Below are positions 10,651 to 62,290 of a stretch of 64,000 bases of DNA, one piece after another (the first letter of the stretch is position 1; each line of letters opens with the position of its first letter). Origin of the DNA: Selaginella moellendorffii. Lineage: Eukaryota > Plantae > Lycopodiophyta. Where the stretch lies: positions 16,850-80,849 of the forward strand of contig NW_003314265.1 in assembly GCF_000143415.4 (NCBI RefSeq), read 5' to 3'. The position numbers were made by a program, and so were the translations under genes. Under the pieces are notes generated by a model that worked only from the letters and a program-made list of their open reading frames with translations, was not told the origin of the DNA and searched no databases.

Positions 10651-10723
10651 GGGGTTGTAGCTCAGATGGGAGAGCGCTCGCTTAGCATGCGAGAGGCACT
10701 GGGATCGATACCCAGCATCTCCA
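10651..10723 (+). tRNA. tRNA-Ala (anticodon AGC)
   Basis: GGGGTTGTAGCTCAGATGGGAGAGCGCTCGCTTAGCATGCGAGAGGCACTGGGATCGATACCCAGCATCTCCA folds as a cloverleaf with anticodon stem CTCGC/GCGAG and the G3:U70 Ala identity pair; one acceptor mismatch (U5-U68). Confidence 0.9.
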
Positions 10724-10899
10724 AATATATTTGCCAGGTTTTGACTGATGTTGAGTAACCGTCAAGAGCTTCGGGACTGCGCACCAGCGCTCCAGCCTGA
10801 ATAGAAGATTGTAAAGGTGGAATCGTTGGGCATAGGCTTGGGTCTACACGCGAAAAGTTTGAGAAGAAAGAGGACGCGATCATCATGAAGATATCAAGA

Positions 10900-11120
10900 C
10901 TGTGATCGATATGTACACCCTGGTATTGGAGCTCTTTGACAGGATGAACTCTCGAAGTTTCATTGCTGCTATGCGCTGCTCAAGCCGAGGAGTGGAGGTC
11001 AGTGCCAAGAGGCCACTACAACGCCGAATGTGTTCGTAGGGAATGGTCTCGTGGATCTATCTGAAGCATGCTCGGGTTTTTATATGAACCGATGCCACGA
11101 AAGAACGATGGATCCTTTCT
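10900..11120 (+). pseudogene. Decayed PLS-type PPR gene fragment
   Basis: Broken-frame snippets IDMY, LELFDRM, PNVFVGNGLVDL and MPRKNDGS resemble PPR motifs NVFVGNALVDMY and FDxMPxKNVVSW. Confidence 0.5.
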
Positions 11121-11413
11121 AGGTGATCGAAATGGAGGGCGTCCATTTCCACAAAGCTCCATCATGGCGTGTTACATCATTTATCCTCTCACCCAGATTA
11201 CCTTCCATAGCATGTGGAATTCTAAGGTTGTGAAGCTCTTGATTTTATGCTTGCCCTAACATCCGTTGGATTGAGAAATATCCTCAAGTTTCCTCTCCAA
11301 CCAGTACTTCAATCACTTACGCTTAAATGTATTCCTCCATAGTATTAACAACAAATCGCCTGTGAGATAGTTTTACACAAATAAAAATTGTCTCTCTTCT
11401 CCAAACCGTGCTT

Positions 11414-14400
11414 TCACATAAAGTACGTCAGTGTCGCCTTCTTCCGAGTGCCCCCTTCACCGTACTGCTCGTTCCATTGCTGCAACTCTCCCATGATACC
11501 AGCATCCGAGGACACGCTTGATCGAACCTGTGACGAAGAAAGCTCTTGAAAACCATTCCAAATCGAAACCTTCTCACCTTCTCCATTGCGTGCCGCATGT
11601 CAGCCATTGAGATTGGACGAATGTAGGGCGTGACTCCGGTTGGAGCTGCCGGCTTCTCAACCCCTTGGGCTTTCGCTTTCTCCATCTCCTGCAACCAAAC
11701 AATCCCTTTTAGCGCGAGCTTGCTCTAAACACCACTTACCTTCTTTTCTTGTTCCAAGAGTTCTCGTATCCGGATGTAGGCCGCCGTTGTGCACAGATTC
11801 TACACGCCAAAGGAAACAACTCAAATTCCTGACAAACTTTGATTTAGACTACGAGCTCACTTTCAAATCGCTCCCGGAATACCCATCTGCCGCCGCTGCC
11901 ACTTCCTCCATGTTAAAATCGGGGGAAAGATCCTCGTCACTAAGTATAACTTTGAGAATTTTCGCACGGTTCTCGGCATCAGGAACATCAATCATCAACC
12001 TGAAAAAAATCGTCAAGCCGATGTTTACAATTGTATTAGATTTACCTTCGCGGAAATCTCCGTATGACAGCTTCATCCAGATCGAATGGACGATTTGTTG
12101 CTGCCAGTACAATGACCCTTTCCTTCTCACGCGTTCTTAATCCGTCCCAGCTAGCCATGAATTCGTTCTTCAGCTTCCGCATGGCTGAATGCTCGTGGTC
12201 TTTACCTCTTCTACCCAACATGCTATCAACCTGTAGAGAAACATACATCAAATGTAACAAACATCCGATTGCATACCTCGTCAATGAACACCACGCTTGG
12301 CGAGATTTTGCTGGCCAAAGTAAATACTGCCTTGACATATTTCTCCGCCTCACCAAACCACTGCGAAGAAAGAAAACGGTAAACTTGAACACTATCACGT
12401 GGTAAGTGCTTACTTTAGATGCAATTGTGGACATTGAAATATTGATGAAATTTGCACCAGCCTCTGTAGCAACCGCCTTAGCAAGCATGGTCTTACCAGT
12501 TCCTGGAGGACCAAATAAGAGTAGGCCCCTACAAGGCTGCCATATAGATTCGTTAGACAAAGAAAAAAAGCAAATAACAAACACACAGACCTTCGTAAGT
12601 TGGCCTTTGACGAATAACTCTGGCCGTTGTAATGGAAGCATCACCAGCTCGCGTAGGGTCTCTTTCACATTATCCAAAGCACCAATGTGATCAAAAGTTA
12701 CTCTAATCTCATCTGGTGGTATGACTTCGGGCAGTAAAATCTTTTCGAACTCATTGTCACAAACTACATCCTGCAACCCACTATCAGACAATGTCCCCAA
12801 GAAAATCGGGCTTGCCTTGAGAGTCTTTTTACGCTGAGTAGACCCTCTTTGAATTGCTTGGAGCTCTGCTAGACTATGCTCCAAACTGAAGCACCCATTC
12901 AAATACGTGACCAAAAGTACGAGGTTTTATGAAAACATACCTCTCCGCTTTGATGACGATCTTGCCGTTTCGATGTAGAGGCTCTACATGATGCTGTAAA
13001 TGATGGCTAATCCCCCATCCGACCACCTTCTCGGCCACTGTAACAAGACATACAAATTACATTAAAGAATTGACAAGGGCTACCGCTTACTATCATGTGT
13101 CAATAAATGAGTCTGGATGTTGATTGTTGACAAGTCGTTGCACTCAACATTGGATGTGGACATAATCTGGACACATCAATTTAAAATGTGAGTAATCTAG
13201 ATCGGGAGCAACATTACACACAATTCGCAGAAGTTGTCTGTTCGCTTCCGCTTTCAGCCTCTCCGTATCCTGTTCGAGTTGACGATTCCACACGAGTAAC
13301 ATATTTTCATCCTGATCATAAGCTGTTAGTCGGAATATTCGTACACGTTTCTTCATTACCTGTGGTTGCTGCACATATATTTTACTAGGAAACAGTTTAG
13401 CAAGCATCCTAGAGCATTTGGAACCATCTGGTTTATAGTCTTCAGCTCGCGTAGAAAGATGATCCTGCATGTTCCCTGTCAGTAGGTTTGAAATTACGGC
13501 CACGAATCGGAGGGCTCACCAGTAAAGACATATCGAGGAACGCCGTAAAATTGTTACCCATCTTGGAATTCGAATGATATGAACCAGAGCTCCCCTGCTT
13601 GTTTATAAAATTTTAAGAAAGCGTCCGTAATTGGTATAACTCATAAGTACCTTGTCCTTATGGTGGTCAGATGTGTGAGATCCAATGATTACAAGCTTCA
13701 CATCGGCCTTTTCCAATCTTTCCAGCTTCATGTACCGCTCAAAGTTCCCCATTATAGATTTTTCCACGTTTTTAATAAGTAAAATCAACGGCACTTTAGA
13801 AGCTTCCGAAACCAGAACCTGGCCAAAAAACAAACTCCTCAGAACCCATTGTAGATAGATAATTCACGCCGTACCTCAATTAAAGAGTCGAGTATCAGCT
13901 TATCTACGTCCTCTCCAGAAGAATGTTCCAACCGAAGCTCTGAAACTGCACGAGAGATTCGTTGCCAGCTGTCAAGCAAGCAACAAAATAATCCTGAGCA
14001 GAACTAGACTCATGCTTCTAAGTATTGCAGCTATACAAAAGACTCTTGGGATTAACATACTAGGCGGAAATGCCTCATACCGCTGCAAAAGTAGCCGTGT
14101 CCATCCTCGCATAGATCTACCAGATTGTTGCCACCGTAAACTGGTTTATCGAACCGCACGCCAACCTTGCTTGGATTGTCTTCGAGTACTAGCAGCACAC
14201 GTCCTCTCGCCCCAATGGACGGTCCTTTGCTTCTTTACAATACACAAACGTCAGCATTATAGCAGAGAGCACAGGTGGCTTACCCGTTCGAGCTTCCACT
14301 GACTAAAACAGCTAGGCCGGAAGGAGTTGCAGGACACGTAGGGCCAGCGAACTTTACTCGATCGCCTTCACAATATACACGCTATAGAATTATGCGGAAC

Positions 14401-15498
14401 AAACGCGATAGAAATTACCTTTCTTCAACGCTCGTCGTGATGATTCTACCACTTGTGTCGTTGCCCCTCCCGCGCTCATTAGTGATGTCGCCAAATCCTT
14501 TGCCTGATCTTTCGATCTAGAACTCGGTAAAGGTAGCTCGACTGCCTCGGAGGTTTTGGTTCTCGTGGGTGAGCTAACTGATTTCGGTGGCTTGCTGTTC
14601 TCTTGGGGTACAGTATCGAGTATAGATGGCGGAGCCACGCCGTTGACACCATCCTGCAGCACCTGACAAGAATAAACACCATGAAAAATTACACGAACAG
14701 AAGAACAGCGAACCTCTTTCGTATCCACATTTTCACCATCTACAATTTGAATGGTCACCTCATCACTTTCCACGGTCTCCTCCGAGACGCTTACGGGCTC
14801 CGGCGTCAGTTCGTTAGCCTGTGAACAAACTTTCTATGATAGCGCTGCTAAAATTGATGGTACCTCCAAACAAATGCTGGCACTGTCGAAGATAAGCAGG
14901 TTCACCTGGAGCTTCTGAGCCAAAGCCTTGACAAGTGTTTCTTGAAAGATTTCCGAGCCTGGCATGCAATTGAATTAAGTGAAAGTGAAACCAACACGCA
15001 AAGACCTAAACCACGAACCTGGAGGTCCTGTCAACAGTATCCGGGGGCTCACAGACGCTAGCTCCGACGTGAATTTCACAAACTCCGGTCTCTTTAGATA
15101 GACGTAGAGTGAATCCAGCAACGCTGTCTTGGTACTCTCACTGTAAGCAGCACGCATGAGAAGGAAAAACAGAGAAGAAGACCGAGGGCTCACTTGAGAA
15201 AGTATGGAAAATTGTCGAGCTCGACGTCGATATCCTTCCACTCGGCAATTGACTTGCGAATGGCGTCCCTGTAAGCCTTGCCCTCTTTGGGCTTCCCAGA
15301 CAATCTCTTCACCTTGTCCGACTTGTAGCGATGCCGATGCTCACGCAGCTCCCTCTTCCGCTTAGATCTCAGGGCGGCGAAGGCGGCCCCAAAGAGATAC
15401 GGGAACGTCGTAGCCGTCATGGCCGCTGCTGTCCCCGCTGCGAAGCCGCCCGCGACAGCCAGCGCCAGCAAAAGAGCTCGATCCCTACCCGATTCCAT
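11414..15498 (-). CDS. AAA+ ATPase of the plant MSP1/ATAD1-like family (At1g02890/At4g02480-type C-terminus); many exons
   Basis: [30 protein letters not shown], Walker [33 protein letters not shown]-terminal KATLTYFM*; N-terminal hydrophobic segment. Confidence 0.92.
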
Positions 15499-15855
15499 GC
15501 TCGAAGCCACAAAATTTCAGCCAAGCGCGCGACGATCCGCTACGCATTCCCTGCTCGCCATGCCGGAGATGGATACATTCCCGCAGCTCCGTCCCCCCCG
15601 GCGCCCTACTCAAACCCTCCTCTCTCGCTAAAACATTAATAAGCTAAAGCCCATGGAAAAGAAGGGCGAGATTAGAGCCGTCGGATGAAGCTCACCGCAA
15701 CAACGGCCGCGATTAATCACGGTTTGGCGCTTCATTTCTCCGTCGGATGGACGGTATCGTACGGCTGACAGAAAAGACAAGAACAAGGCTAGGGCTTTTT
15801 TTTTTTTACAGCACGTGTTTGTGATGTGAAAAGAGTGATGATTTGGAAGTTCTTT

Positions 15856-16589
15856 CTATCGATGATCGAGTGATCGAGTGTTTCTCTCGGCTGGGATGGG
15901 ATTCATAGCTTTGATGGCTAATCGATAGCATTCTCTCCAAAATTCTACGCTGCTACTCGTCTCATCATCTAGATTGGTGAGCTCCTCTGCGAGCTCCACG
16001 CCCGAATCCGAGCTGGGATTGGAATTACCCGATGGAGTGTCGGGGCGTCCAGCGCTCGCGGTCGAGGAATCCGTGGCAGCAGCAGCAGCAGCAGCAGCTA
16101 GGGGCAATTGCAGTGGCGCTTGGAATTTGCGCTTCTTGCTCTGGCTCTTCCGCAGGATCGAATACCAGAAGTTCTTGACATCGTTGTCTGTTCTTCCGGG
16201 GAGCGCGGCGGCAATCACGGCCCACCTGTAAAAGCAAGCAACATCCATTCCATTTGCCATGCGCAAGCGTTAAAATCTCTGTACCTGTTGCCCATCAGCG
16301 AGCGTAGCTCCACAATCTTCTTCTTCTCGTCCGCGGTGAAAGGATCCTTGCGAAGATCTGGCCGGAGGTAATTCCTCCACCGTAGCCGGCAGCTCTTCCC
16401 GCAACGCTGGAGCCCTGATCACCAAGAAAGGTGGCTTGAGAACCAGAAAAAAAGCTATGGATATCGATTACCCGTCTCGTTTGGCACGCTACTCCAAAAT
16501 GTAATTCCTTTGGTGATAACATAGTCGAGAAGTATAGAGTCTTCCTCAGGTGACCACAAGACTTTCCTCTTCTCCTTGTGTCTTGCCAT
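15856..16589 (-). CDS. R2R3-MYB transcription factor (3 exons)
   Basis: [20 protein letters not shown]|[28 protein letters not shown]|[21 protein letters not shown], with the usual R2R3 intron positions. Confidence 0.93.
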
Positions 16590-17279
16590 TTCGTGATCAA
16601 CCAAATTGATAATGTGTGGATTTATACCCACCATTGCCCTTCTTGCCCAGCACGTGGGAACCACACGGTTTTTTGTTGAGTCGTCCTTTCTTCTCGAGCA
16701 AAAAAACACGTGTTGTTTACATGAGTTTTACATTACTGAGTTGCAAGAAAATTTAGAAAACACGACTGTCAGAACAACATATAAATAGATAGATAGATTA
16801 GTATGGCGTGCAATTCATGAAAAAGTGAGTGTTACTGTTGCAAATTTCACTCACAATACATTGTCCATATGGCAATTTTCTATTGGTTCGGCATTAAATG
16901 TCATTTGGATGCCTCATGAATACCCCATGGCCTGATAAGTCAATGATGTCCCTATAATATGAACAATGTGCTATATATAGACCACATATCATCAAGTTTG
17001 ACCCCATGACATAAGGATTCATTAGGTCATAGGGTTTAAGAGATGCTTTCTTGCTTGAGCACCCTGCTTTAGTGCTCTATTATTTGGCATGTTTCTTGGT
17101 AGTAGATATAAAAAGTAACTTAGTTTGCTAGTGATTGGTTTCAAATGTTTTTGTGGGCAGTGTTAGAAGTGGCTTTGATTTATTATTAGATTGCTCTCTA
17201 TAAACTTTCAAGTTCCTACCATAAGTATAGTTCCCTCCTTAGTTTACTTCAAATTTGTGTCACTGAAACTTTTTTTTTT

Positions 17280-18430
17280 AGGTTTACTGGAAGACGTGGA
17301 AGAAGATGAAGTGGATGGCCTTCCATCCAATTTTAATGATTTGGACTATAGTTCAAGTGTGGATAGTGACAATAATGCTCTCCCAAAGGTTTGCTTAGTT
17401 TCCAGCCTCCTAAATTCATGATTTGCATGTTTCTAGGCCTTTCATAATTTTTTGCGATCAATGGGATTTAGTAGTCTAGCCACATTTGGCACCTAGATGC
17501 ACATGAAAATCCTCAAGACTAAGACTATTGCTTATCCCACATGCTATTTTAGAATTTCCAAGCCAACACTATACAAATACATGCAACTTGTTGATCCAAA
17601 TTGGAGAGGTGTATTGGAAGAGGTATTTCATCACGTTCGAACTAACAATGCCCTAAATCAAAGTGGCACAAATTGGGGGATTATCAATTCCTGATCTAGC
17701 TGTCGAACTGGAGGATACCGGTTTAGCCGACGCCAAATTGGTGAGGCCTTAGCCACTCACGATCCGACTAGGTTAGAACAAAGGCACATAATAAAGATTT
17801 GATGATAGATTTACAAGAACAAGGAGGTTTATGCACTTTGCCATATGGATTATGAATATTCTTTCATTTTTGCTTTTTAGTCAGCATATGTGGTAACATG
17901 TTTATTGTAGTATATTGCAAGCTTGTAAGCTATGGTTTCTATGTACATGTCATTATTTGCAGGGCAACTCATTATATTGTAGCTTGCAAGCTAACTACCT
18001 CCAAAGAATCCCATGCAATATTCAACACATATGCGTAAATTGTTCGTCGATTTGGAAGGCCTAAGCGCATTCGGACAATGCTCTAAAGCACAATAAGGTT
18101 GAAAGGGACATAGTCTACTGTTGGGGTCTTGCAACTAGGAGCTTCATATGTGAGACATCAACACGTAACTAGGTACTCACAACATTAAAGTTTTTTCGAA
18201 TAAGGACTAAATCAAATTTGTTTTGCAACACATAAAGTGTTTGTGGAGAGAGCTCTTTGAGCACGTGGTGTGGTTTTATAAGCACATTTTTTGAGTCCAT
18301 GGAAGATATAGAAATTCTTGATGGCACAACTAATTCATGGCACAACTAAAGTCTATGTTGTGTTTTTGCTCTGTACCTCAAGAAGAATATTTCAGTTGCA
18401 ACTTGGAACCTCCATGACGTCTGTCTATTC
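17280..18430 (+). pseudogene. IS3/integrase-like DDE transposase relic with introns
   Basis: HTH-like FRISKPTLYKYM; GYRFSRRQIGEALATHDP..EQR..KI***IYKNKEVYALCHMD; YCKLVSYGFYVHVII; IVRRFGRPKRIRT; RSFICETSTRN*; IKCLWRELFEHV; WNLH. These are colinear with the eukaryotic integrase-core consensus RRxYxxxGPNxLWHxDGxHKLxxYGFxIHGxID...YGxPxRIRxD...RGSFIxGxSxHNQRIERLWRD...WNxH. Confidence 0.85.
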
Positions 18431-19099
18431 AATGTGGTGATTACTTCAGAGTATCTCATGTTCCTGCAAACTTATTTCAACAGATGGAATGAGAGATTGG
18501 GTAAGAATTTTGGTAATGTTATAGAATTTTTTATAAATTGTGTTTTTGTAGGATTATGCCGGCTGTTGGTGGAAAAAAATATTGAAGACCTTCTTGGACC
18601 ATTTCTCTCCAATGTCAAAAGTGCAACTCTATCAGAGGTAATTTTTAGAGCAAGAATATAATAATTTCTTTTAATCTATTTTGTTATGCTTAGTTACCTT
18701 ATAGGCTTTTGACACTGTTTGAAACCAAGCATTTTTAATACATTGGGAGGGACTCAACTTGGACAAGCAATATCTACTTCATTTAGATTTAACAATGGAA
18801 TGTGCAATCGCTAATGTTGTGAGTGTAAATCTACCACTTTACATCAAGAGTGTTTTACCTATAGCAACACCAATGAAGCGATGAGCTTTTGAAAAATTAT
18901 ACTTGGCTATACTCAGAGAAAACTAAGTGTTCTTTAGTGTACATTTCAAATTTAAATTCAATTTTTAATTTCCTCAATTTAAAGGTTCCCATGTTCAGGA
19001 TTAGAGTTTACACCAACCATATTAATTGTGCCTTGGATATGGGCAATTTCATTTTATGACATAATTTTGTCGATGGTTTGTTCATTCTTCCAATTGATT

Positions 19100-22000
19100 C
19101 GTATTATCTAACTAAAGGCAAGGCTTCTAGTGCACATTCCCCCGATTGCAAAACCACCGCGAAGCAAGAGCACCACAACTGCGATAGTGGGTAGCTTCTC
19201 CTCGATTAGGTTTGCATAAACAATCCTTTGTGGTTTGTAAGCTCGAAGCAAGAACACCACATGCCTTAACAGTAGTACACACTATGCAAGAAACACCTCA
19301 CGAGCACACACCCAAGAACTCGATGTTCTACAATCGGTACAGCCAACAATTCCACAAGACACACGCCAGCCACTTGATTTCCAAGCTCTGCAGCAGGGAC
19401 ATTAACTCCAACAACATCCCATCCACAGCTCCTGACTGCATTTGAGCAAGTAGAGTGCTACCTAACATTGCATACACTACAATATATGCAAAACCTCTAG
19501 CATGTTTCATTTTCCTTGCCTTCCCTGGAAAGCAACAACCTGAGCATTCAAAATGAGGAAGTTTGGATGCCTTATGCTCATGGTGTTGTCCAATCTGGAA
19601 CGTTGCCACCAACACCAACTACAAGACATACTCACGAAAGCCCATATAGTGCCATTGCTACCAGCCCCGCAAATCCACCAGCCGCTACAACTCTCACAAC
19701 TCCATCTACTAGTACAAGTGCCAGTACCTAACCATCTACCTCATGAAGTAACCAAGCGGTCCAGCTTAGTAAGTTTTTCATTTGTACCTATCTTTTTTCC
19801 ATATGTTTTTTTGCGTAGGGTTGACAATGCTGCCACACCAACGAGCTTATAGTTCCCTATTAGTATTCCACAACTACTCCCAAGGATCGACATCGTCATC
19901 TAGTGCAGCTTCGACATCCAGATATATTCAAATTGACCCTCAAGGTGGGCTACCATATGAGCCACAGGTATAACATGACCCCATGCACTCTTCAAAATTT
20001 TTTTTCTTTAGATTTGTTTGACTTATTGTCATTTCACTATGCTATGGTTACAATGCACACCTATGCTAATAACAATCAGTAGTCTTTATCTTGTCGTCGT
20101 GGACATCATGGCAGTCGATCCAAAGTCATTGGTTGGATGTCATTTATGACACCTTTGGTCCCCTGGCCGTTCACCACAGTTCTTGTCACCAAGTGGATTG
20201 CAATCTTGAAAACTTAGCATGTACACTTGTATAGGCGGAAAAGAGAGCCATCTATGAAGGTGATAGAACTTGACGAGCTAGCAATGGACCTCCCAAAGTG
20301 TCTGATATGGGGTGGCTTATACTCCAGTATTCCTTTCCAACCCGACACGGCTCAACATGTGATTCTACTATCACTCTAAGCCTCAAGAATCTAACTTTCA
20401 TCCATGACCAACCTAGGAGCATTTATCTGGTGTGCAAGGTAGTCCAATGGTGGTGAGGCCCATGCTAAGTCTGCAAAATTTAGCCTCAGCTTTATTCAGC
20501 TTTGCTACTAGCCTCCTCAAACATCATGGGGAGCTATAGCAAACAAGGCTAATGACAACTGGGTAATAGTAATATACTTATACAATATTATGGAGCATTT
20601 TACTGACAAACATTGGCTAAATTATCAAAAGCAAACCTGAGCACTCGATAAGAAGGATATTCGTGAACGTAAGTCATTATTTTTTTAAAGTTCCCTCCTC
20701 ACAAATATATGTTTGGTTTTTGCAGTTGTAGTTGCTACAAATACCTTAACTACAAATGATGATCCCTTGGTGATAGAGCCATTTCTCCCGAGGCTAGCCA
20801 TGTAGGAACCAAACCAAGACGAAAATAATGAAGACGAAGACTTTGCAGATGAAAAAGACATTCTTCCATTACCAAAAGAAACTTTCCCCACACAAGACAA
20901 CATCATTGGAAGGATTGGGGGAGTGTTCTCTTTAAGCTTAGTTTTTCAAAAGCATAGTATGAGGATGTCTTTTGTGATAACACAATCCAGTAGCTCTTTG
21001 TTGAAGGAAGTATTAATATGCCTTCTTCAATTGTTGAGTCCACAATAACATGGTTCATTGAGAAAAGGTACATGTATCTATTTCTTAGCACTTAGTACCA
21101 TTTAATTATTTTGTGCAGAAACCTACGTAGGAATTGGGTAGCTGCACAACAATTGAGAGAACTATTTGACACTGCTAAAACACTGTATTGTAAGTTCTTT
21201 TGTTTTTGCATTGAAAAGGCCATGCTTTGGCCATACAGACTTACTCGTACATGTTTGAGGTCGTCTTGCATTCTAGTAAGCAATGAATTGCCTATGAATT
21301 GGAGTTCCCTCACTTGTCCTTCCAGATTGCACTAAACAATGAATTCAATTGTTTCCAATTCACCTTCAATACTAATCTCCACATATCAAATTACAAAGTG
21401 GTCTATGCATCTAAAATTAGAGGAGCTTTGGTGTGGGAGGAAGCCACAATAGATGTGGGTGGGCCACATGCAAAAGCCATTAAGGAGGTTGTTTGCCAGA
21501 TTTCAAGATCGGTAAGTTTAATTTTCATTTGGCTCACTAGAGTAATTTTGTGTTATAAACGCATGGACTGTTTGTGTTTAGGGAAGGAGTCATGTATTGG
21601 CATCCTAGGATGCCAGTGCATTCTAGGATGTTACAACAAAAAGCATAGAATGTGGTAAGTTAAGTTTAAAGCACAAGTTTTATATACTCCTCATTTCTAT
21701 ATGCATAGGCTATCTTTGTGGGCTAGTTGCTATTCCAAGCATTTAAATGTAATGCATAAGTATCTCGTGGGTGTATAATTGCAACATTAACAATTGTAGC
21801 CAGAGAGGTTCTAAACAAAAATGACTGATGACTTGCCCTAGGAAGACTATATAAGATGGACCTTAAGGCATGTGTGCCACATATCTAAAATGCACTCAAT
21901 CAATTGTGATGTGCATCAAGCCTAAAGGAGGAGGGTGATTGACACAAGTCTGTGGATTCCATCTTAACGAATTTTGCAATTACCAACTACAATGCAGTGC

Positions 22001-22332
22001 TTGAGTCTAGACTCACCAAACTTGGTGAAGGTTATGAGCAGGCTGTGGAGGCATGCATGGCTGCAGTGGTCTAGTATTACCTATTCATTGAACCAAACAT
22101 AGTGGGAGACTTACTTTGAGATGGCTTCCAACACTCAATGCGTATGGAAGCTTATTAGAGGCTTTACAAGAGTCTAGCATTGCTAGGTGGGCTTTCACTC
22201 ATTGGGATAGATGCTTTATTACAAATCGTTCGGGTAAGGATGATCATTCTTCCCACAGAGTTCATCAATTGTCTAATCTTTGATAAGGACTTTGGAGAGA
22301 ACTTCCACAACTGGATTGTGGACATCATCTGA
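19100..22332 (+). pseudogene. Second gene inside the transposon: Q/P-rich region, acidic region and a putative HECT-like domain relic
   Basis: Spliced, decayed coding sequence. YKVVY...EEATIDVGGPHAKAIKEVVCQI (21452-21466 = DxGGP, resembling the HECT N-lobe motif), YLCGLVAIPSI, and terminal MIILPTEF...FHNWIVDII*. Confidence 0.5.
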
Positions 22333-24177
22333 AGTAACTATTTACTTTCACAAACAACTAAAACTCTTGTATGTTTGAATATTTTATAGATATAAGCTCG
22401 AAAGAGTTATCCAAGTTCCATCATTTTGTGATTGATTCTCCAAAGTTTCGACCGAGAGAGCCTATTTAGATCCAAGTTGAAAGACATGGTACATCATCTA
22501 CTCGATTTCCCAGGTTCTTCACATACACACGAAAAGTTTTCTTCCCTTTAACATACCCATCAATGGAGTGGACCAAACACAAGATCCACCAGGCACTCCA
22601 AAATCTAGAGAGTTTATATGGATTGGGCTGATGTTGTGGAAGTATCATAATCTAGACACTTTCACAATAAAAAAGGTAATTTCTTAAAATATGTTTCACA
22701 CTTTGAAAGAGACTCTTTCTAGTTCATTGGCAAAGTTAAAAGTAAGAATATTCAAAATATTCCATAAATGCCCATTATAGGCACTTGTGGCCCTTTTTTG
22801 GCTTATGCTTGCCTCACTAAAGGTAATCACTATAGCTTCCAAAGTAGCTCCCAATTGAGTCAAAACTATTGAGCTTGGATGCTATATAATGCCCATCCTC
22901 GCTTGAGGAATTTTCAACCTGTTTCATGGTAGAACTAAAAGCACCCTCTGGGTCTGTGAATTCGTCTTTGCTTGTATCTCGAGCAGTAACATATCCCTCC
23001 CTGTTACTTTCTTCAACAGGACCTTTCCCCTCAGTGATTGGCACAACATTAGGAGTAGTTTTGGGCTGCCTTGTCAGAAGGATTGTTGAGCCTTGAGAGG
23101 AGGAGGCATTATATAGAATCCTTGGTTCTATCCCTTATTAGATCCATTGTTGTGCCTCAAAGAATTCATAGAATCCTCTTTAGTTTACCATGCCAAGAGG
23201 AAACACAAAAACCTCAAATATTGCAAAAGGGTTAGAGCATATAAGAAATTATCACAAATCTACTCTTACCAAAGTGAGCATAAGTTTCTAATCCTTGAAA
23301 ACTCCAATTCTTTGGCAACATACATTAGATAGTTTTGCCCCATTCTTGGAAACCCTTTTTACAAATTTCAAAATTTAAAATGGTTATGATTGGAAAATGT
23401 TGAAAGTGTCCATTGTTATTTGAATGTTATTGCATGCAATTGCAACTTCCATATTCTCAAATTTCCTTCTGCATGCTCCTCTTGAGAGAACTCCAAGTCT
23501 AAACATTAACATTATGCACTTTTGCGTAATACATAATTGAAATATAAGCCCCACCAATTCATGGAATTGGTTAGACTTCAATTTACTTTTGAGTTATATG
23601 TAAATCTTCTAAGCATCATGGTACAAAACTAAAGTGTTGAGAGAGCTACACTAGAAATCAATGCCAAGGATAAGCTTAATGGGATGCATTAGAGACATGA
23701 TTCTAGACAGTATATATCCATGGCTTTACAATGGAGCTAGATGGAGTTCAATTATGCTTGCTATGAACATTATGTTAAAAGAGATGTGCCAAAAAAGGAT
23801 AATTCAGTTCTTTTGCCATGAGTAAGATGTGAGAACATAGTGCTCTAGATAAAGTAGTATGGTATGCAATTGTCCATTTGGTTTGCAACATTAACAACTT
23901 ATGGGATGAATGGGTCTATGGGCCATGAATGGCTCCATTCCATACATAGCATAGGTCGTTGCTATGGGCATGATGCCCCATCCGGGGCATAAGGATTGGA
24001 TATTTGTAAAATATTCTATGCTTGTGTTTTTTTCACTCATAATACACATGGACCAATAGCAGGCATACACGTAGTGTGAGTGAAATCCATGTAAAATCCA
24101 CCCTTTTACGAATTGCATGCCATAATTAGCTTCTTTATAATCCCCATCCACGCTAGCCAGAAAACGGCGCTGTCGTT

Positions 24178-26541
24178 TCAGTTACCATTTGCTGAAGTGG
24201 TGATTATGTTCTCCACGACTTCAGGAACACTTCGGAGTCTCGCTGGAGATCCGTTCTCGGCCGGCATCGATGAAACTAGCTTCCGGAGACCGTTGTTACT
24301 GGCTTTCGTGTCAGTGATTGCGGATGGATAGCAGCGACTGAAACACGCGACACAGTATGGAGAAGCTACCTGAGTAGAGAGTTGTTAGTGTTGGATCATC
24401 TTATCGGTTGGTTGGCCCGCTTACCTCCAAGTACGCACGGCACGAGGACATGAAGAGATTCGCTTCGCTGTCCTTGAGAATCCGCGTCGAGGAGTAGCGC
24501 AGCAGGGAATCCGAGACACTGCACAGTGCTTTCTGGAACTCGAGCGCTAGCCTGTTTGACAAGCTCACAGGAGCACACAGCCTTAGTTCGTTAAGAGCTG
24601 CCAGAATGCCTGTGAAAACACGATTGTGAGCGGCTCACGAGAGGAAGTGGCACGTACCGTTGACAAACACGGCTAGAGGTGGATGTTCGATGAGAGACTG
24701 AGGAGGGGCGTTCTTGTCCTCGGAATCTCTGCTGGACAATCTAACTGAAGGCAAAGGAACCCAGCGGTGGGAATCGAGCATGTGCTGTAGACATAAAAGT
24801 TTATTCTTCCTCTCAACACTCGCTGAAGAAGAATTACCTGGAAGTTTTGCAACGCTATCGACAAGTTCCGCACAAATAAGTCATACACGCACCTGCAAAA
24901 GACAATCACCAATAAGAACTATCCCCCGGAAGAGCTCAAGATAACTTACGATTCAAAAATTGGTGGCAAAAGACCTCTAAAGTCGAGACCCACCCGGCCA
25001 AGACTCACCCCGCAGTACTGCCAAAAGCTCAAAACGTTGAAGCAAAGACTAGACATAGGATGCTCAACGTACCATGCACAAGTCTAAAATAAGAGCCAAG
25101 GATGCACCCTCGGTGACTTTGGGAAGCAACTCGCGCAGTGTGTCCAACAGGCAGGTTATGCGATGTGTTGCCCAGCTAAACAGGAGGCCACCATCCGAGG
25201 GCTCAGAAGTGTCATCTGAAAAAATAGCACGATATTGAGTGACAACATCGTGAATGTTCACACGATGGCACTCGGTCATGCTCTTCAAATACATGTAAGG
25301 ACTGCCTTGGTCCAAATCGTCGAGAAGGCCAGCAAGCCAGGCCTCCCTACATTTTAAAAACTGAAAGCATCAATTCAATAGGTGCTCACGAGCATTAAAA
25401 CTGGAAGGTAGCTTACTTGCAACCGCAGCTCAATGTCGTGGAAAACTCCCAGTCTACGTAGATATCCTATTATTCTGAGGCACTCCGGAACCTACAACAT
25501 TCAAAGCTCAACAAAGTATTCGACTGTTCCACGAAAACTACCTGAATATTGGACCGCAACCTCTGGAGGAGCTGTGCAAGAAGAGACTGCGTGTTTTGTC
25601 TCACATCCGCTACGAGAGACTGGATGACTGGTAGTCTATAAAGCAACTACAAAGATGAGACGAGAAAAAATACCGCAAACTAGATTGACGCACCTCATAT
25701 GCATGGTGGCGAGCTTTGCCACGAACGCCTCAAGATCAAGAGCCTCGTCATAGTTACCATTCCGCACACACCTGAAATCTGACTCAAACAAAAGTAAAGA
25801 CAGAGAAAATAAGCCCGCTAACGTAAGGTACTTACGTATCCATCAGCTGAGGGATCTCAAGTAAATCCAGCAGAGTACTATGGTTCGCAAGCAATGTCCT
25901 GTTAAGCTTGCGTTTCTCAAGAATTTGCTGAGCCGAATCCATGAATTCATTGCAGCCGGCGGTCAGCTTAGGAATCTCTGCAATCTAAGATACGAACAAG
26001 TTAACAAAAGAAAATCTAAGCGAAAAAATCAGGAGCACACAAACCATGCCGAGCGATAAAAATCTAGCACAAGAATCATCTCAGGCAATCGAAAACAACT
26101 GAACAAACCATCTCAAGAACACATCAGAAAAATCATCTCAGAGCTAAAATCATCGCAAACAATATAAGAACACACAAGCGAGTGAAACGAATCATCAAGC
26201 AAATCCAGATAAATGTACTTCACCAGGGATTCCACATGCTGATCGATACTAGCCACTTCCTTGGTGATGAACTGGAGCGATTCAGCCGCCGTGATGAATG
26301 CTCGATAATGCCCCACCGCGACCTCTTGCATCTGGCGAGAGATCCGCTCGGCATCGACCCGCAGGAGCTCCGGTTCCTACAATCGGTCCGATGGATCTAG
26401 AAATATTTCGTCAAGAACTAGATCTAGACTTACCTTGTGGAGGCGATCCAGCGGATAGGAGAGTAGATCCGAGACATAGGACTGCTGGAACACATTCTCC
26501 AGTCCTGGCGGAAGCGCCTGCTGGTCGGGCGCCATCGCCAT
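24178..26541 (-). CDS. COG8: Conserved oligomeric Golgi complex subunit 8 (Dor1 family); multi-exon
   Basis: [16 protein letters not shown]|[54 protein letters not shown], and [19 protein letters not shown]. Confidence 0.93.
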
Positions 26542-26612
26542 TCCTTCCCAGCAAAATAAAATAAAAGCTACTACCGCGATAGGGTTTGGTTTAGCTCATC
26601 TAGGGTTCTTCA
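26542..26612. promoter_or_regulatory. 71-bp bidirectional promoter region between COG8 and SRP72 with telo-box(es)
   Basis: Divergent ATGs at 26541 and 26613; TAGGGTTT at 26580-26587 and TAGGGTTC at 26601-26608. Confidence 0.6.
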
Positions 26613-28849
26613 ATGTGGAAGGGAGGAGGCGTCTCAGCTCCGCCGCAGCAGCCCGACGATGATGCGCTCCACGATCAGCTGGCGCAGCTGGAAGCGCTGC
26701 TCAAGAGCTCCAGGAAGAACTACAAGCAAATTCTCAAGATCGCCGAGCAAGGTGTGGAGTTTTTGCGAAGAGAATGCTAAATGCGATGTGTTTTTCGCTT
26801 GTGTAGTGCTGGCGGTGCATCCAGATGACCCGGATGCGCTGAATTGCAAAGTGGTTGCTCTGATCAACAGTGACAGCTTTGGCGATGCTTTGGCTGCGAT
26901 CGACTCGGCAGGATCGGTGGTGGATCTGAAATTTGAGAAGGTGAGGATTGAAACATTGTTCTTCTCCAGTCAAGCGTTTTTCATGACCTTTGTTTTTTCC
27001 TTTGTAGGCATATTGCTTGTACCGTCTTGGTCGCTTCGCGGAGGTCTTACAGATCTTACAAGGAGTGGAAAACAGCCCAGGTGTTCTCCAACTCAAAGCC
27101 CAGACTCTCTTCAAGACAGGTGATCTTAACGCCTGCGTTGAAACTTACGAGACCATTCACCGCGAGTTTAGCATCGAGTCGAGCGAAGTGAAGAGCAATG
27201 CCATTGCTGCCTATGTCTCTGGAGGAAGATCCAGGGAGGCTTTCGAGCGCATGCGATCGATGCAAGTCAATCCCAAAACTCTTTTCGAGCTGGCATATAA
27301 CGTCGCATGCGTTTTGATAGACCAAGGAGAGCTCTCGCAAGCCGAAGAGCATCTACTTCTGGCACGTAGACTCGGGCAGGAAATGCTGCTCGAGGACGAG
27401 TACAGCGAAGATGAGATTGAGGACGAGCTTGCTCCAGTAACAGCTCAACTGGCCTATGTGCTACAGGTAACCACACTCTAGTTTTCCATGCGGCTCGATT
27501 CTTATGACATTTTTGTCTCAGTTACAAGGACGTGCAACCGAGGCCACGGAGAGTTGCCTTGCAATCTTGAACAGAGATTTGAAGGAGAAGGACCTGCCAA
27601 CCTTGGCTGTCGTTTCGAACAATCTCGCAGCTATTCGCAAAAACAAGGATGCATCCGACTCCTTAAGGAAGCTCGAAGTTGTCCTGAAGAAGGATGCAGA
27701 TGGTAAACGTCTCCAGTTTCCCGAAGCCTTGGGACAGAAGATGTCCATCAATCAGAAAGAGGCTCTAGTCTATAATTACTTTCTACTGCTTCTCAGCACC
27801 AACAAACTTAACCAGGTGAGCTTTCCGATTATCTGCCGCTCTTTTTTTCTTAAACATTCTTGCTGTTCCAGGCGCGCGAACTTATACCATCACTCGTGGA
27901 AGAATACAGCGGCAGCAGCATGCCCGTTGTTCTCAAGGCCTGCTTGTCATTGAAAGAAGGAAAAATCGATCTTGCGGAAGAAGTTTTGGGGGAGTACGCA
28001 GAGAAAAACTCCGAAAGCACCGTTGAGCCGTTGCTCCTGTGTGCGCAAGCCAGGACCACTGCTGGACACTATCTGGAAGCTGCGGACGTCCTCCGGAAGG
28101 CCACAGATATCAGGCATATGCCAGCGATAGTGGCGACGGCAGTTGATCTCAAGGAACGCGGAGGCGACGTGCAAGGGGCCCAAACCATCCTGCTCGAGTC
28201 TGTGAAATGGTGGGAAGACAGTATGGAGGAGACGAGGGACGAGATAGTAGAGCTGCTGCTGCACGAGGCTGCGAAGCTAAAGCTGAAGACGAAGGACTTT
28301 GCAGGGGCGGCTGAGTTATATGAAAGGCTTGCAAAGAGCTCTTCTTCCAAGGCAGTCGGGCTGGAAGCCATCACGGGGCTCGTCTCCTGCTTTGCCGAGA
28401 CCGACGTGGCCAAAGGAGAGACTTTTGAGAAACAGCTCCCGGACGTAAAGGTGGTGGACGCAAGCAAGCTTGAAGAGAGCTCTGTGGTTCCGGGTGGCAG
28501 TAAAACGATTCAAGCGAACGTCGAGGAGAAACCAGCCGAGGAAAAGAAGAGGAAGAGGAAGAGAAAGCCTCGGTATCCGAAAGGCTACGATCCAGAGAAC
28601 CCGGGGCCGCCGCCGGATCCAGAGAGGTGGATGCCAATGCGGGAGCGGTCTTACTACAGGCCCAAGAAGAAGGACAAGCGCACTGCACAGCTGAGAGGGT
28701 CTCAAGGAGCGATTTCCAGGGACACTTCCTCTTCCTCGGCAGTAGCAGCAGGAGCAGCAGGAGCAGCAGCAGGATCGAATGGTCCCAGCACTTCCAAGCC
28801 TGCCGAGACAAGAGGTGGTGGCAAGAACAAGAAGAAAGGCCGGCGGTGA
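26613..28849 (+). CDS. SRP72: Signal recognition particle subunit SRP72; multi-exon
   Basis: CKVVALI..FEK|AYCLYRLG TPRs, FELAYNVAC, EIEDELAPVTAQLAYV, and the RNA-binding signature KRKRKPRYPKGYDP..PPDPERWMPMRERSYYR. Confidence 0.95.
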
Positions 28850-28952
28850 TGCTCTTCTCTCCGAGGTACTCGAAGCTTTCTTTTTGTTCTTCCAGATCAT
28901 GAGAAACATTTTTGTTAAAGCTCTTATGACAAGTTCTCCAAGTTCTTTGGTT

Positions 28953-31900
28953 TTACAAGACTTTAATGGACCAATCTTTGTCGATGGATACGTTTGGCAG
29001 CCTGACGGCCACAGCGTTGGATTTGAGCTTGGCTCGCAAGACCGGAGGCGCTGCCTCGATGTCGGCCTGCCTATCTTGGCCCCCCTCCTCCACAAGAGCT
29101 CGGTGTGCTGCCGGGACTTTCTTTGCATCCAGGCCCAGGATGATGATCCTCTCGACCGTGGAGAGAGTCTTGTAGCTCTTGCTGGCTGGTGAGGCCGAGG
29201 ACGAGGAGAGTTTGCCTCCCGAGAAGCTAAAGCGACGGTGGATGAAAGCTCCTTTCTCAAACTCGTAGCTCTTGCCGTCGTCGATGTAGAGCTCTCCTTG
29301 TGCTTCTTGAGTAGAGTTTAGCGCGATCACCTATAAAAGTTTGTGCTTCGTGAGATTCTCGTTCAAGCGATGGAAGTAAAAGAGGATGGCTTACCAAAGT
29401 GTATGGATCATCCACCATCTGGGATGAGCTGCGCCTAAACCTGTCCTTGCGAGGAATTATCGTTCCACCCCGCTGGAATGCAGGGATGGAGTCTTGTGAG
29501 ACAGCGAGCTTGTAAGTTTTGCCACCATTGAAACTTTGGCCGGTCTTTATGTCAAACCATGGCTCGGATCCTGGCAGATAGACCGTCTCCAAATTCGATC
29601 CCTGAAAACAGCAACGAAGTTGGAAAACATTTTATTTTCTTCTCAAGCAGAAGTTTACAACTTACTTCCGTGTACACGCTGCGGACGAGCAGTGCATCGC
29701 CGATAAGGAACTCGTCGTCCATTGCAAACGTCTCGGGATCGTTCGGATGCTCAAACCAAAGTGGTCGCATCACAGGAATGCCTGTTTCGTGCGCTTCCCG
29801 GAAAAGAGTGTAGTAGTAAGGGAGCAGTGCATAGCGTGTATGAATGGCTTCACGAATCCGAGACGTGTATGGCTCCCTGCACAACAAAAAAGCAGTTTTT
29901 CATAGCCTTCTTAGGAAAAGCTAGCAAAGAACTTCATACCCAGGAATCCATGGTTCTCTCCGCTTTGTGTCAAGGTGAGCATGAGCTCTAAAAAAGGGAT
30001 AAAACGCTCCTAGCTGATACCAGCGAGTCAGTAACTCCGAACTAGGATTCCCAAAGAATCCTCCAACATCCGCCCCTGGAAGAGCATTGTCAAGGATGTC
30101 TTTGATAGAAATGTATCATACCTGTGAACGCGATTCCAGTTATCCCGAGAGACAAAATCATAGGCACTGAAACTCTGAGCTGTTCCCAGTCTGCAGTGTT
30201 ATCACCAGTCCAAATGGGACCAATCTTCTGAGTTCCGGCAAAGACAGCTCTTGACAGAACAAATGGTCTTTGGCCTTCGCGATTCCGAAGGCCTTGCGTT
30301 GTGGCCATATGGAAATAGTAACCATAAGCATTGTGAACGTCACGGTGCTCAATGCCGTTATAGTGAAGGTTGTCTCGCGGCATGGAAACCTGGAAGCGAA
30401 CGTGAATCCCTGAAGAAAAAATCGAGCAAACGTACCTCCGGCCCATTAAACACGGATGGCTCGTTCATGTCATTCCAAATGTGAAGAATCGACGTTGAGC
30501 CAACGTAGTTCTTCAGCGTGAACTTCTCCGCCCACCAAGCACGAATCTCCGGATTCACCAAGTCGGGGTAGGACGATGAGCCCGGCCAGCACCAGCCATC
30601 GTAGTCGCTTCCATGCGAGTTTTTCACGTAGTAGCCTTTGGACGTAGCTTCTTTGTGGAGAGCAAAGCCTTCGTCCCTCTTGATGTGTGGATCCACTATC
30701 GCCACCATATGCCGACCTTTAGCCTCGAGCTTAGCTTGCATCTCCTTTGGAGTGGGAAAAGTGATCGGATCCCAAGTGAAGTAGCGCTTGCCATCGGTGT
30801 GCTCGATATCCAGCCAGATGACATCATACGGGATATCATACTCGTCAAACTTCGCATCAACCTGAGCAACATCAGCTTCGTCCTTGTAGTTCCAGCGGCA
30901 CTGATGATATCCGATGGAGAAAAATGGTGGCATCGCTGTTGTTCCAGTGACACCGGTGTACTGCTGCACCACGTCCTTGGGTCCAGGACCAACGAAAACG
31001 AAAGCGTCCACGATCCCAGCCTCCGCAAACCAATGAGTGTCGATGCCTTGCTTGGACTCCTCCCCGGCGGCACCGTCCCAGCCTGGTGATAAAACGTCGA
31101 TGAGCATCTCCGCCGCGTTGAGCCAGAAGAACCCCGAGGTCCTCTTGGAGCCGTGAGAGAGCATAAACGGGATGGATCCATACAACCCGAATGGCGACTC
31201 GGCGAGGTACTCGAACACGTCCAGGTTGAAGAGTCGATAAGGCTCCGAGTGTTCTTCCGTCCCTCTCGTCGGCTTCAAGGCCAAGCTCGTTGCTCGCTCT
31301 GGAATCCCGTAGACGTGCTCGGCACCGTGGAAAGAAACGTCGAAGCCGATGGATTGAGGTCCATATGGCCTCGAGTCAGTGTGGCTTCGGAAGTGTTCCT
31401 CCCAGTTCTCGCCTTCTTGCTTCTCCCGGCGCTGCTCGAAGTGAAACAAGCCTTTGCCGTTGACGGACACAAGCTTTTCCTGTCCTCTGGTGACATACAC
31501 CTGGAACGGCTCGTGTTGCAACACGACTTCATGACCGGAAGAAAGGTAGAACGTTGAGAGTCCATCTTTCGCTGTGATCCGCTGGAGCCACAGCCGCTTC
31601 TTCTCCAAACCGTCCACAAGAACGTCGGGGACTTCGAAACGCTTCTTGCCTCCGGGGACGTTCTCTTGGTCGACTTTGATCCGCAGCACACCACCTTGAT
31701 ACACCATGAGCTTGAGCACCAAGTTGTCTGACCCGGTGGAATTCTCGGGGATTAGCCGTGCTTGCACGAATCCATCCACAACTTCGGCGGGCGAGGCTCG
31801 GAATCCAGAGCTCCCGGGTTTGCGAGCGCGAGAGTCCTTGCAAAAGGGAGTCTGCTGGCACTTTCGAAACTCCTCGCTCTTAAAGCATGTCACCGTGTTG

Positions 31901-62109: not shown

Positions 62110-62290
62110 ATTCTCTTGAGATGAAGTTCCTAACAACATCATCAAACTTCCCCTGGTTTTAAAATCTTAGTTGCCTTGGGGACAAGGTGATAGATGGTAT
62201 GCCTCAGATCCACAAATAAACTGCTTAGTAATGGAGATAAATGGCAGTAGTGAAGAAAAACTACCTAGTGGAGAGAGATTTCTACAAAAA
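62110..62290 (-). pseudogene. Decayed duplicate of the 5' end of the 59898-61703 gene
   Basis: Colinear with 61505-61695 (cttgagatgaagttcct...aaaaactacctag), differing mainly by C>T and G>A changes. Confidence 0.9.

What the first reader, a model, noticed from the sequence alone, without database searches (positions are those of the whole stretch)
16802..24124. Complete 7.3-kb IS3EU-like DNA transposon (TATGG...CCATA TIRs, 5-bp TSD) in a land plant, missed by the ORF track
Seen: ~60-bp imperfect TIRs beginning TATGG and ending CCATA, flanked on both sides by ATTAG. Inside is an intron-split, stop-riddled transposase whose motifs (HTH; RxxxxALxxxDP; CHMD for WHxD; KLxxYGFxxH; FGxPxRIR; SFIxxxSTxN; IKCLWR for IERLWR; WNxH) follow the eukaryotic IS3/integrase-core family rather than LTR-retrotransposon integrases. 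Recalled knowledge: IS3EU elements have TAY..RTA ends, usually 6-bp TSDs, and are described mainly from animals and fungi. GingerRoot, described from Selaginella, has TGT..ACA ends, so the termini argue against it. Inference: a poorly known or undescribed plant lineage of IS3EU-like transposons with a 5-bp TSD, possibly horizontally acquired. A 6-bp GATTAG TSD with a 1-bp loss on the right is an alternative reading.
Basis: partly seen in the sequence, partly recalled or inferred. Interest (0 to 1): 0.88.

Follow-up and report, generated by a model that had tools for sequence, protein, structure and literature searches.

The report
Dead spikemoss GingerRoot/IS3EU transposon copy
This 7.3-kb stretch is a long-dead, internally deleted copy of an abundant cut-and-paste jumping gene of the IS3EU/GingerRoot kind, already described in spikemosses; its family differs from published ones in duplicating 5 instead of 6 bases at the insertion site and in carrying two extra genes.

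Summary
The element at 16802-24124 has TATGG...CCATA ends, about 54-86 nt of imperfect inverted repeats, and ATTAG on both flanks. Inside is a frameshifted, stop-riddled integrase-type transposase.

Eleven paralogous copies in the Selaginella moellendorffii assembly (83-87% identical by blastn) begin and end homology exactly at these two coordinates. Their transposase models pass Pfam rva_4.

The IS3EU-like call is correct. However, GingerRoot (Cerbin 2019, Selaginella) ends in TA..TA, not TGT..ACA, and has been merged with IS3EU (Kojima 2023). Fungal IS3EU elements end in TAYGG..CCRTA, exactly as here. So this is a known kind, known from this plant genus, and nothing points to horizontal transfer.

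Two features are not in the papers I could search:
- All 8 independent insertions examined have a 5-bp target duplication, never 6.
- The roughly 8.5-kb family carries a HECT-like ligase gene and a small gene with an RNase H1-type hybrid-binding domain.

The window copy is not complete:
- It has a ~686-bp deletion.
- The catalytic Glu is Lys.
- The HECT Cys is Tyr.
- It carries 497 private substitutions, 84% of them C>T/G>A.

The scan found this family before at three other places in this genome.

The parts
16797..16801 (.). Left target-site duplication, ATTAG
   Evidence: identical to 24125-24129
16802..16887 (+). Left terminal inverted repeat. It starts TATGG. The core 16802-16855 is conserved in all copies, with similarity to about 16887. 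It contains a GTGAGTG...CACTCAC subterminal pair.
   Evidence: homology to other copies starts exactly at 16802
17133..18923 (+). Remnant of the rva_4 (IS3EU/GingerRoot-type) DDE transposase gene, spread over three frames with many stops. HTH-like ISKPTLYKY lies around 17560. D1 is in CHMD at 17839-17850. D2 is the GAC codon at 18074-18076, preceded by a 4-bp deletion. The catalytic Glu is replaced by Lys (AAG, 18235-18237).
   Evidence: Pfam on pieces: rve E=0.0014, rva_4 E=0.11. phmmer hits to P0001-P0003 at 83-88% identity, and these pass the rva_4 gathering score. tblastn maps. Catalytic codons.
17852..17910 (+). 59-nt phase-1 intron of the transposase gene. The donor GTGAGT is mutated to ATGAAT in this copy.
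   Evidence: GTGAGT...TTGTAG is conserved in other copies, and the models P0001-P0003 read HMD-SY-CKL across it. Also.
19241..19680 (+). Pro/Thr-rich, coding-like segment conserved in the family. It is included in the S. moellendorffii gene models either as the transposase tail or as the head of the HECT gene. Which gene it belongs to is not resolved.
   Evidence: tblastn of P0003, P0005 and P0013 at 70-79% identity
20341..22631 (+). Remnant of the HECT-like gene. P0012 residues 1-83 map to 20590-20925. Residues 84-258 are deleted. Residues 259-747 map to 20904-22628. There are at least 22 in-frame stops. The C-lobe lies at 22347-22628 and ends ...LYGLG followed by a stop. The catalytic Cys codon TGC is TAC (Tyr) at 22524-22526.
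20903..20904. Junction of an internal deletion of about 686 bp, specific to this copy
   Evidence: L004, L005, L007, L008, L010 and L011 each have 674-690 extra bp here, and L001 has 1284 bp. Contigs of other copies run on as loose ends at 20903.
22775..23343 (-). Remnant of a small third gene on the opposite strand. Its first exon encodes an RNase H1 N-terminal (Cauli_VI) hybrid-binding domain in better copies. Here it is broken by a net loss of about 22 nt and by stops.
   Evidence: blastn and translations. Pfam Cauli_VI on exon 1: L004 25.6 bits (gathering score 21), L005 20.2, L002 17.6. The N-terminus of P0001 maps here.
24039..24124 (-). Right terminal inverted repeat, ending CCATA
   Evidence: homology to other copies ends exactly at 24124
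24125..24129 (.). Right target-site duplication, ATTAG

Best explanation
Positions 16802-24124 hold one old, dead insertion of a multi-copy IS3EU/GingerRoot-superfamily DNA transposon. The host is a Selaginella genome, most likely S. moellendorffii.

The intact family is about 8.5 kb long. It has TATGG...CCATA termini and TIRs of about 54-86 nt. It carries three genes:
- an intron-containing HTH + DDE transposase of the Pfam rva_4 type, on the + strand;
- a HECT-like protein gene, on the + strand;
- a small protein with an RNase H1-type RNA:DNA-hybrid-binding domain, on the - strand.

Inferred mechanism: the transposase bound the TIRs, excised the element and integrated it by a 5-bp staggered cut, which left the ATTAG duplication. 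What the two accessory proteins do is unknown. Interference with host silencing or with target choice is conjecture.

Shown here: this copy landed about 210 bp upstream of the start of an R2R3-MYB gene. It has since been inactivated by cytosine-deamination-type transitions, small indels and a 686-bp deletion, so it can neither make its proteins nor, probably, be mobilised efficiently.
For: - Ends and TSD.
- Eleven paralogous loci in GCA_000143415.2 (Selaginella moellendorffii), 83-87% identical by blastn, with homology stopping exactly at the two termini.
- Multi-copy status: about 1,000-1,500 contig pieces at least 80% alike, and a depth jump at the left border.
- Transposase type. Pieces of the window hit rve and rva_4 weakly. 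The family models P0001, P0002, P0003 and P0013 hit rva_4 at 32-51 bits, above the gathering score of 26 and better than rve. The nearest Atlas clusters are rva_4 proteins of Basidiomycota, Mollusca, Cnidaria and Chordata, followed by bacterial HTH+rve IS transposases.
- Literature. GingerRoot was described from Selaginella with TA..TA ends (PMC6839031). IS3EU and GingerRoot are one lineage, and IS3EU always ends TA..TA (PMC10045372). Fungal IS3EU end in TAYGG..CCRTA and can carry extra genes (PMC12730594).
- 5-bp TSD in 8 of 8 independent insertions.
- HECT-like gene.
- Hybrid-binding-domain gene.
- Decay: 497 private substitutions, 415 of them C>T/G>A. Glu to Lys, Cys to Tyr, mutated splice donor and a 4-bp deletion.
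Against: - I could not place the transposase in a phylogeny with reference IS3EU, GingerRoot, Ginger1/2 and integrase sequences. None were available: the supplements are not held. The superfamily assignment therefore rests on the Pfam family, the termini and the published descriptions.
- The 5-bp TSD departs from the 6 bp (6-8) reported for GingerRoot and the 'usually 6 bp' reported for IS3EU.
- The TIRs are shorter than the 100-150 bp reported for S. lepidophylla GingerRoot.
- The HECT call is below Pfam's gathering score. My own structure model failed (pLDDT 29).
- The species of the window was not verified through an orthologous flank. It rests on the paralogues and on earlier notes of the scan.
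Confidence: 0.9

Rival explanations
1. It belongs to a previously undescribed plant lineage of IS3EU-like transposons, distinct from GingerRoot and possibly acquired horizontally from animals or fungi.
For: The 5-bp TSD differs from the published 6 bp. TIRs are shorter than in S. lepidophylla GingerRoot. The nearest named Atlas clusters are fungal and animal. S. moellendorffii is not named in the main text of the GingerRoot paper.
Against: They are TA..TA. GingerRoot was reported in three lycophyte species and in mosses. The family has conserved GT-AG introns, many old copies about 9-13% apart in the aligned set and host-type C>T decay. None of this suggests recent transfer. No tree was made, so 'distinct lineage' is untested rather than shown.
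Confidence: 0.07
2. It is a Ginger1/Ginger2 (TDD) element or another derivative of a gypsy-type retrotransposon integrase.
For: The rve domain is detectable. A 5-bp TSD is typical of LTR elements. The GingerRoot authors found Ginger2 as the best Repbase match to their DDE.
Against: The termini are TA..TA, not TG..CA. There are TIRs, not LTRs. No HHCC zinc finger or GPY/F pattern is visible in the family models upstream or downstream of the core (by eye). rva_4 outscores rve in every model. No reverse transcriptase or RNase H lies inside the unit.
Confidence: 0.02
3. The TSD is really 6 bp (GATTAG) with a 1-bp loss on one side, so the family is an ordinary 6-bp IS3EU.
For: G precedes the left ATTAG. 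This copy has many small indels.
Against: In 8 independent insertions, k=5 gives 5/5 matches five times and 4/5 three times. k=6 gives 0-2 matches of 6 in seven of the eight and 4/6 only in the T-run case.
Confidence: 0.01

Closest known systems
GingerRoot (Cerbin, Wai, VanBuren & Jiang 2019, Selaginella lepidophylla; PMC6839031)
   Same: - Same plant genus.
[quoted passage not shown]
- TA...TA termini.
- No HHCC or GPY motifs.
- Similar full length (about 8.5 kb here; 8.6-8.9 kb on average there).
- Hundreds of mostly inactive copies.
   Different: - TSD is 5 bp here in 8 of 8 insertions, against 6 bp (rarely 7-8) there.
- TIRs are about 54-86 nt, against 100-150 bp.
- This copy sits in gene-rich DNA about 210 bp from a MYB start codon, whereas GingerRoots were reported to lie far from genes.
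- The TSDs here are not GC-rich.
- The paper does not mention HECT or hybrid-binding-domain genes (0 occurrences of HECT or ubiquitin).
IS3EU superfamily of Repbase (Kojima & Bao 2023, PMC10045372; fungal TET+ IS3EU, Kojima 2025, PMC12730594)
   Same: - Terminal signature TAYGG..CCRTA, matched exactly by TATGG..CCATA.
- TIRs longer than 30 bp.
- HTH + DDE transposase without HHCC.
- Multi-gene elements exist, with an accessory gene in the same orientation as the transposase and another in the opposite orientation.
   Different: - TSD is 5 bp rather than 'usually 6'.
- The accessory genes here are a HECT-like gene and a hybrid-binding-domain gene, not TET/JBP and alpha-kinase.
- The host is a lycophyte.
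Ginger1 / Ginger2 (TDD) DNA transposons
   Same: Eukaryotic cut-and-paste elements with an integrase-like DDE core and short TSDs.
   Different: Ginger elements end in TG..CA. Ginger1 has YPYY/HHCC/GPY motifs. Neither feature is present here.

Membership tests
IS3EU/GingerRoot superfamily | Bounded by terminal inverted repeats, not LTRs, as a single mobile unit | tested here: met
   TIR alignment of 8 copies. Homology to 10 copies stops at the two termini.
IS3EU/GingerRoot superfamily | Termini 5'-TA...TA-3' (fungal IS3EU: TAYGG..CCRTA) | tested here: met
   TATGG...CCATA in the window and in all copies with both ends. Criteria taken from PMC10045372 and PMC12730594.
IS3EU/GingerRoot superfamily | Target-site duplication of 6 bp ('usually' for IS3EU; 6-8, mostly 6, for GingerRoot) | tested here: not met
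   5 bp in 8 of 8 independent insertions. 6 bp is at chance level. The published wording makes 6 bp a usual rather than invariant trait, so I treat this as a variant within the superfamily and flag it.
IS3EU/GingerRoot superfamily | HTH + DDE transposase of the IS3/IS481/integrase type, without an HHCC zinc finger or GPY/F module | tested here: met
   rva_4 (PF24764) hits above the gathering score in P0001, P0002, P0003 and P0013. D, D and E were located, with about 56 and 34 residues between them counted by eye in P0001 and P0006. No HHCC pattern is seen in the models. A weak HTH_17 hit appears.
IS3EU/GingerRoot superfamily | Transposase core groups with reference IS3EU/GingerRoot sequences in a phylogeny | not tested
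   No reference sequences were obtainable. No supplements are held, and protein searches returned only S. moellendorffii models. Atlas neighbours are rva_4 clusters with the taxonomic spread reported for IS3EU/GingerRoot, which is a lead only.
GingerRoot as described in S. lepidophylla | TIRs of 100-150 bp | tested here: not met
   Recognisable left/right similarity ends by about 86 nt.
Ginger1 / Ginger2 (TDD) | Termini TG..CA; Ginger1 also has YPYY/HHCC/GPY motifs | tested here: not met
   The termini are TA..TA. Moving the boundary to TG..CA destroys the TSD (reasoning from the sequence).
LTR retrotransposon (gypsy/copia) integrase | Direct long terminal repeats, with a reverse transcriptase/RNase H/protease polyprotein | tested here: not met
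   No such Pfam hits in any long open stretch of the element on either strand. The ends are inverted, not direct.
HECT ubiquitin-ligase domain (second gene) | HECT fold with a C-lobe catalytic cysteine near the C-terminus | tested here: inconclusive
   - Pfam HECT scores 21.4 and 20.7 bits (E 2e-4 and 4e-4), just under the gathering score of 23.9, covering profile positions 213-301 of 306.
- UniRef names P0012 a HECT domain-containing protein.
- In the Atlas, 29 of 30 feature neighbours are HECT (score 0.95), with TM 0.56-0.60 over residues 380-747.
- The TGC Cys codon is conserved in 7 of 7 other copies and is TAC in the window.
- My AF2 model failed, and the PDB sequence searches were blank.
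RNase H1 N-terminal hybrid-binding domain, Cauli_VI (third gene) | Match to PF01693 at the gathering score | tested here: met
   Exon 1 of the L004 copy scores 25.6 bits (gathering score 21). L005 scores 20.2 and L002 17.6. The window's own exon is broken by a deletion.

The most novel reading that the evidence does not exclude
The Selaginella moellendorffii family is a distinct three-gene branch of IS3EU/GingerRoot. Its integration chemistry uses a 5-bp stagger. Its conserved HECT-like ligase and hybrid-binding-domain protein are functional partners of the transposase, for example by targeting a host silencing or repair factor for degradation, or by recognising R-loops at targets. They would not be captured host fragments. 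This would be an unreported accessory module for a eukaryotic cut-and-paste transposon.
Probability: 0.3. Interest if true: 0.55.

Novelty: new variant of a known kind. Interest (0 to 1): 0.3.

Why it matters
Integrase-type IS3EU/GingerRoot transposons in spikemosses were published in 2019, so this is not a new plant lineage.

Two points are worth keeping:
- TSD length is used as a superfamily diagnostic. The GingerRoot census required 6-8 bp TSDs to call an element intact. A family with a consistent 5-bp TSD would be scored as truncated by such pipelines, so copy numbers in Selaginella may be underestimated.
- The family keeps two extra genes in fixed order and orientation across copies, a HECT-like gene and an RNase H1-type hybrid-binding-domain gene. 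Fungal IS3EU carry TET/JBP and alpha-kinase genes in a similar layout. This suggests the superfamily repeatedly recruits accessory proteins, possibly against host silencing.

The insertion lies about 210 bp upstream of an R2R3-MYB gene and could affect that promoter. I did not test this.

Tried and rejected
- The gapless inverted-repeat finder did not report the TIRs. Alignment did.
- Pfam on 20 further open stretches of the window copy (18.7-24.1 kb, both strands) gave nothing meaningful. This copy is too decayed.
- A word-index protein search with the 60-aa transposase piece found nothing. The exhaustive phmmer search did.
- Later word-index searches returned only S. moellendorffii models, so no distant or named IS3EU relatives were obtained.
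- No supplements of the GingerRoot paper are held, so no reference DDE sequences and no tree.
- An AF2 model of the HECT-like half, from a 3-sequence alignment, failed at pLDDT 29. I ran no fold search on it.
- PDB sequence and profile searches for the HECT-like region were blank.
- I considered and rejected moving the element boundaries to TG..CA, or by one base. Both destroy the TSD.
- An empty-site test in the other haplotype was not possible. Read laying is limited to 6 kb here and the two junctions are 7.3 kb apart. No tool searches plant assemblies by DNA.
Natural gene models from less decayed copies served instead.
- The majority-rule comparison only counted differences.
Full report
**1. 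The observation.** The left end reads TATGGCGTGCAATTC from 16802. The right end finishes GAATTGCATGCCATA at 24124. ATTAG lies immediately outside both ends. The gapless repeat finder missed the inverted repeats because they contain indels. A pairwise alignment and a 16-row alignment of both ends from eight copies show a core of about 54 nt conserved at both ends, with further similarity to about 86 nt. The exact 15-nt terminal motif occurs only at these two places in the 64-kb window.

**2. It is one copy of an abundant family.**
- Pfam on the stop-free pieces gave only weak hits: rve at E=0.0014 for 17856-18035, and rva_4 at E=0.11 for 18211-18291.
- An exhaustive phmmer search with the 60-aa piece found three proteins at 83-88% identity. 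All are 'hypothetical protein SELMODRAFT_...' models of Selaginella moellendorffii, encoded on scaffolds of GCA_000143415.2.
- I fetched eleven such loci (L001-L011). Blastn shows colinear copies 83-87% identical to the window element. Homology starts exactly at window 16802 and stops exactly at 24124. This fixes the boundaries independently of the TIR/TSD argument.
- Laying the contigs of four DNA runs of the organism on 16300-22200 gave about 1,000-1,500 pieces at least 80% alike. Depth jumps by more than tenfold at the left border.
- Full-length copies measure 8,458-8,762 bp.
- The window copy, at 7,323 bp, lacks about 686 bp that every other copy has at 20903/20904. Contigs from other copies run on as loose ends at 20903. 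So it is not complete.

**3. What kind of element it is.**
- The less decayed models P0001, P0002, P0003 and P0013 pass Pfam's gathering score for rva_4 (PF24764, 'integrase core domain') at 32-51 bits. They always score better on rva_4 than on rve.
- The nearest ESM-Atlas clusters are rva_4 proteins of Basidiomycota, Mollusca, Cnidaria and Chordata, followed by bacterial HTH+rve insertion-sequence transposases. There are no retrotransposon integrases among them (a lead, not a test).
  - GingerRoot, discovered in Selaginella lepidophylla, ends in 5'-TA...TA-3' in 72 of 77 intact copies. It has 6-bp (rarely 7-8) TSDs and 100-150-bp TIRs, and occurs in lycophytes and mosses (PMC6839031).
  - Rust-fungus IS3EU 'end with TAYGG..CCRTA' (PMC12730594). 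This is exactly the TATGG...CCATA seen here.
The element belongs to the kind already known from this plant genus.
- I could not make the confirming tree. No reference sequences were available: no supplements are held, and the word-index searches returned only S. moellendorffii models.

**4. The target duplication is truly 5 bp.** I compared the flanks of every copy that has both ends.
- Five insertions show perfect 5-bp duplications: ATTAG (window), GAGAG (L002), GCTCA (L004), TTTTT (L005), GAATG (L008).
- Three show one transition: ACTAA/ACTAT (L007), CACCG/CGCCG (L010), CAAGC/CAAAC (L003).
- L003, L006 and L011 share flanks. They are one insertion copied along with its surroundings, so I counted them once.
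- For k=6 the matches are at chance level.
The family departs from the published 6 bp.
- The eight TSDs are not GC-rich and show no consensus.

**5. Gene content.**
- *Transposase (about 17133-18923, + strand).* It has an HTH-like N-terminal part (ISKPTLYKY). The catalytic residues are D in HMD, D in RSDN and E in NQRIEHLWRE, with about 56 and 34 residues between them, counted by eye in P0001 and P0006. I saw no HHCC or GPY pattern.
- *Its intron.* A 59-nt phase-1 intron with GTGAGT...TTGTAG is conserved in the other copies. It is needed to read HMD-SY-CKL. So 'intron-split' is right.
- *Second gene (about 20341-22631, + strand).* It corresponds to P0012 (747 aa).
  - UniRef calls P0012 a HECT domain-containing protein.
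  - Pfam HECT scores 21.4 and 20.7 bits on P0012 and P0013, just under the gathering score of 23.9, on the C-lobe.
  - In the Atlas, 29 of 30 feature neighbours are HECT (score 0.95). Its own model superposes on HECT ligases at TM 0.56-0.60 over residues 380-747.
  - My own AF2 attempt failed (pLDDT 29) and the PDB sequence searches were blank. I call the domain HECT-like, probable but not proven.
- *Third gene (22775-23343, - strand).* Its first exon in better copies matches the RNase H1 N-terminal hybrid-binding domain: Cauli_VI scores 25.6 bits in L004 against a gathering score of 21.
- The searchable literature does not mention HECT or such a domain in GingerRoot or IS3EU. Fungal IS3EU with TET/JBP and alpha-kinase genes have an analogous three-gene layout.

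**6. State of this copy.**
- Against seven other copies it has 497 private substitutions, 415 of them (84%) C>T or G>A. It is the most decayed of the eight. Read laying shows the same bias.
- The catalytic Glu codon, GAG in five of seven other copies, is AAG here.
- A 4-bp deletion precedes the second Asp.
- The intron donor is ATGAAT.
- The HECT Cys codon, TGC in seven of seven other copies, is TAC.
- tblastn alignments cross dozens of stops.
- The third gene has a net loss of about 22 nt.
- The element is dead.

**7. Context.** The left end lies about 210 bp upstream of the start codon of an R2R3-MYB gene on the minus strand. A COG8/Dor1-like gene and an SRP72 gene follow on the right. The insertion is therefore in gene-rich DNA, unlike the gene-poor preference reported for S. 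lepidophylla GingerRoots.

**8. Method notes.**
- I did not revert mutations or splice or join the pieces. Each piece was searched by reference, and natural models of other copies stood in for a reconstruction.
- The comparison only counted differences.
- Earlier notes of this scan (s1-341407, s1-432101, s1-366114, and s1-418132 for this same stretch) had already identified this family as a dead GingerRoot/IS3EU with HECT and hybrid-binding-domain genes elsewhere in the genome. I re-tested those claims here. They hold at the level stated above.

**Verdict.** This is a known kind of element. The family-level variants (5-bp TSD, two accessory genes) deserve a line in an annotation, not a headline.

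Noticed in passing
window 15856-16709 (- strand): An R2R3-MYB gene. Two Myb_DNA-binding hits fall on separate exons. Its start codon lies near 16590, so the transposon's left end is only about 210 bp upstream, in the probable promoter.
   Followed up: partly
L003:5882-6004 and 8967-19133; L006; L011:9483-17596 and 20480-21477: The same insertion recurs several times on two scaffolds. Its flanks are ...ttaaacaagc | element | caaacaaaattg..., with about 2.9 kb of spacer. So one old insertion was amplified together with its surroundings by tandem or segmental duplication, or the two haplotypes are both present.
   Followed up: partly
L002:8744-13159: A rearranged 4.4-kb copy. The transposase segment is inverted relative to both ends and most of the HECT gene is lost. 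The annotated protein P0001 is a chimera that fuses the start of the minus-strand third gene to the transposase.
   Followed up: partly
window 16826-16854 and 24030-24086: Each end carries a short inverted pair of the subterminal motif (GTGAGTG ... CACTCAC; TTTCACTCAyAmTAC on both strands at the right end). These are possibly transposase-binding sites. The statistics in the window alone are weak: 3 matches against 0.9 expected.
   Followed up: partly
window 24200-30000: The neighbours are ordinary host genes: a COG8/Dor1-like gene (- strand, around 25.1 kb), SRP72 (+ strand, 27.0-28.8 kb) and a glycosyl-hydrolase family 31 gene (- strand, from 29.0 kb).
   Followed up: partly
window 36001-38000, 56001-58000 and 62001-64000: Three stretches have very low G+C (0.24-0.28), against 0.45-0.6 around them. 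I did not examine them.
   Followed up: no
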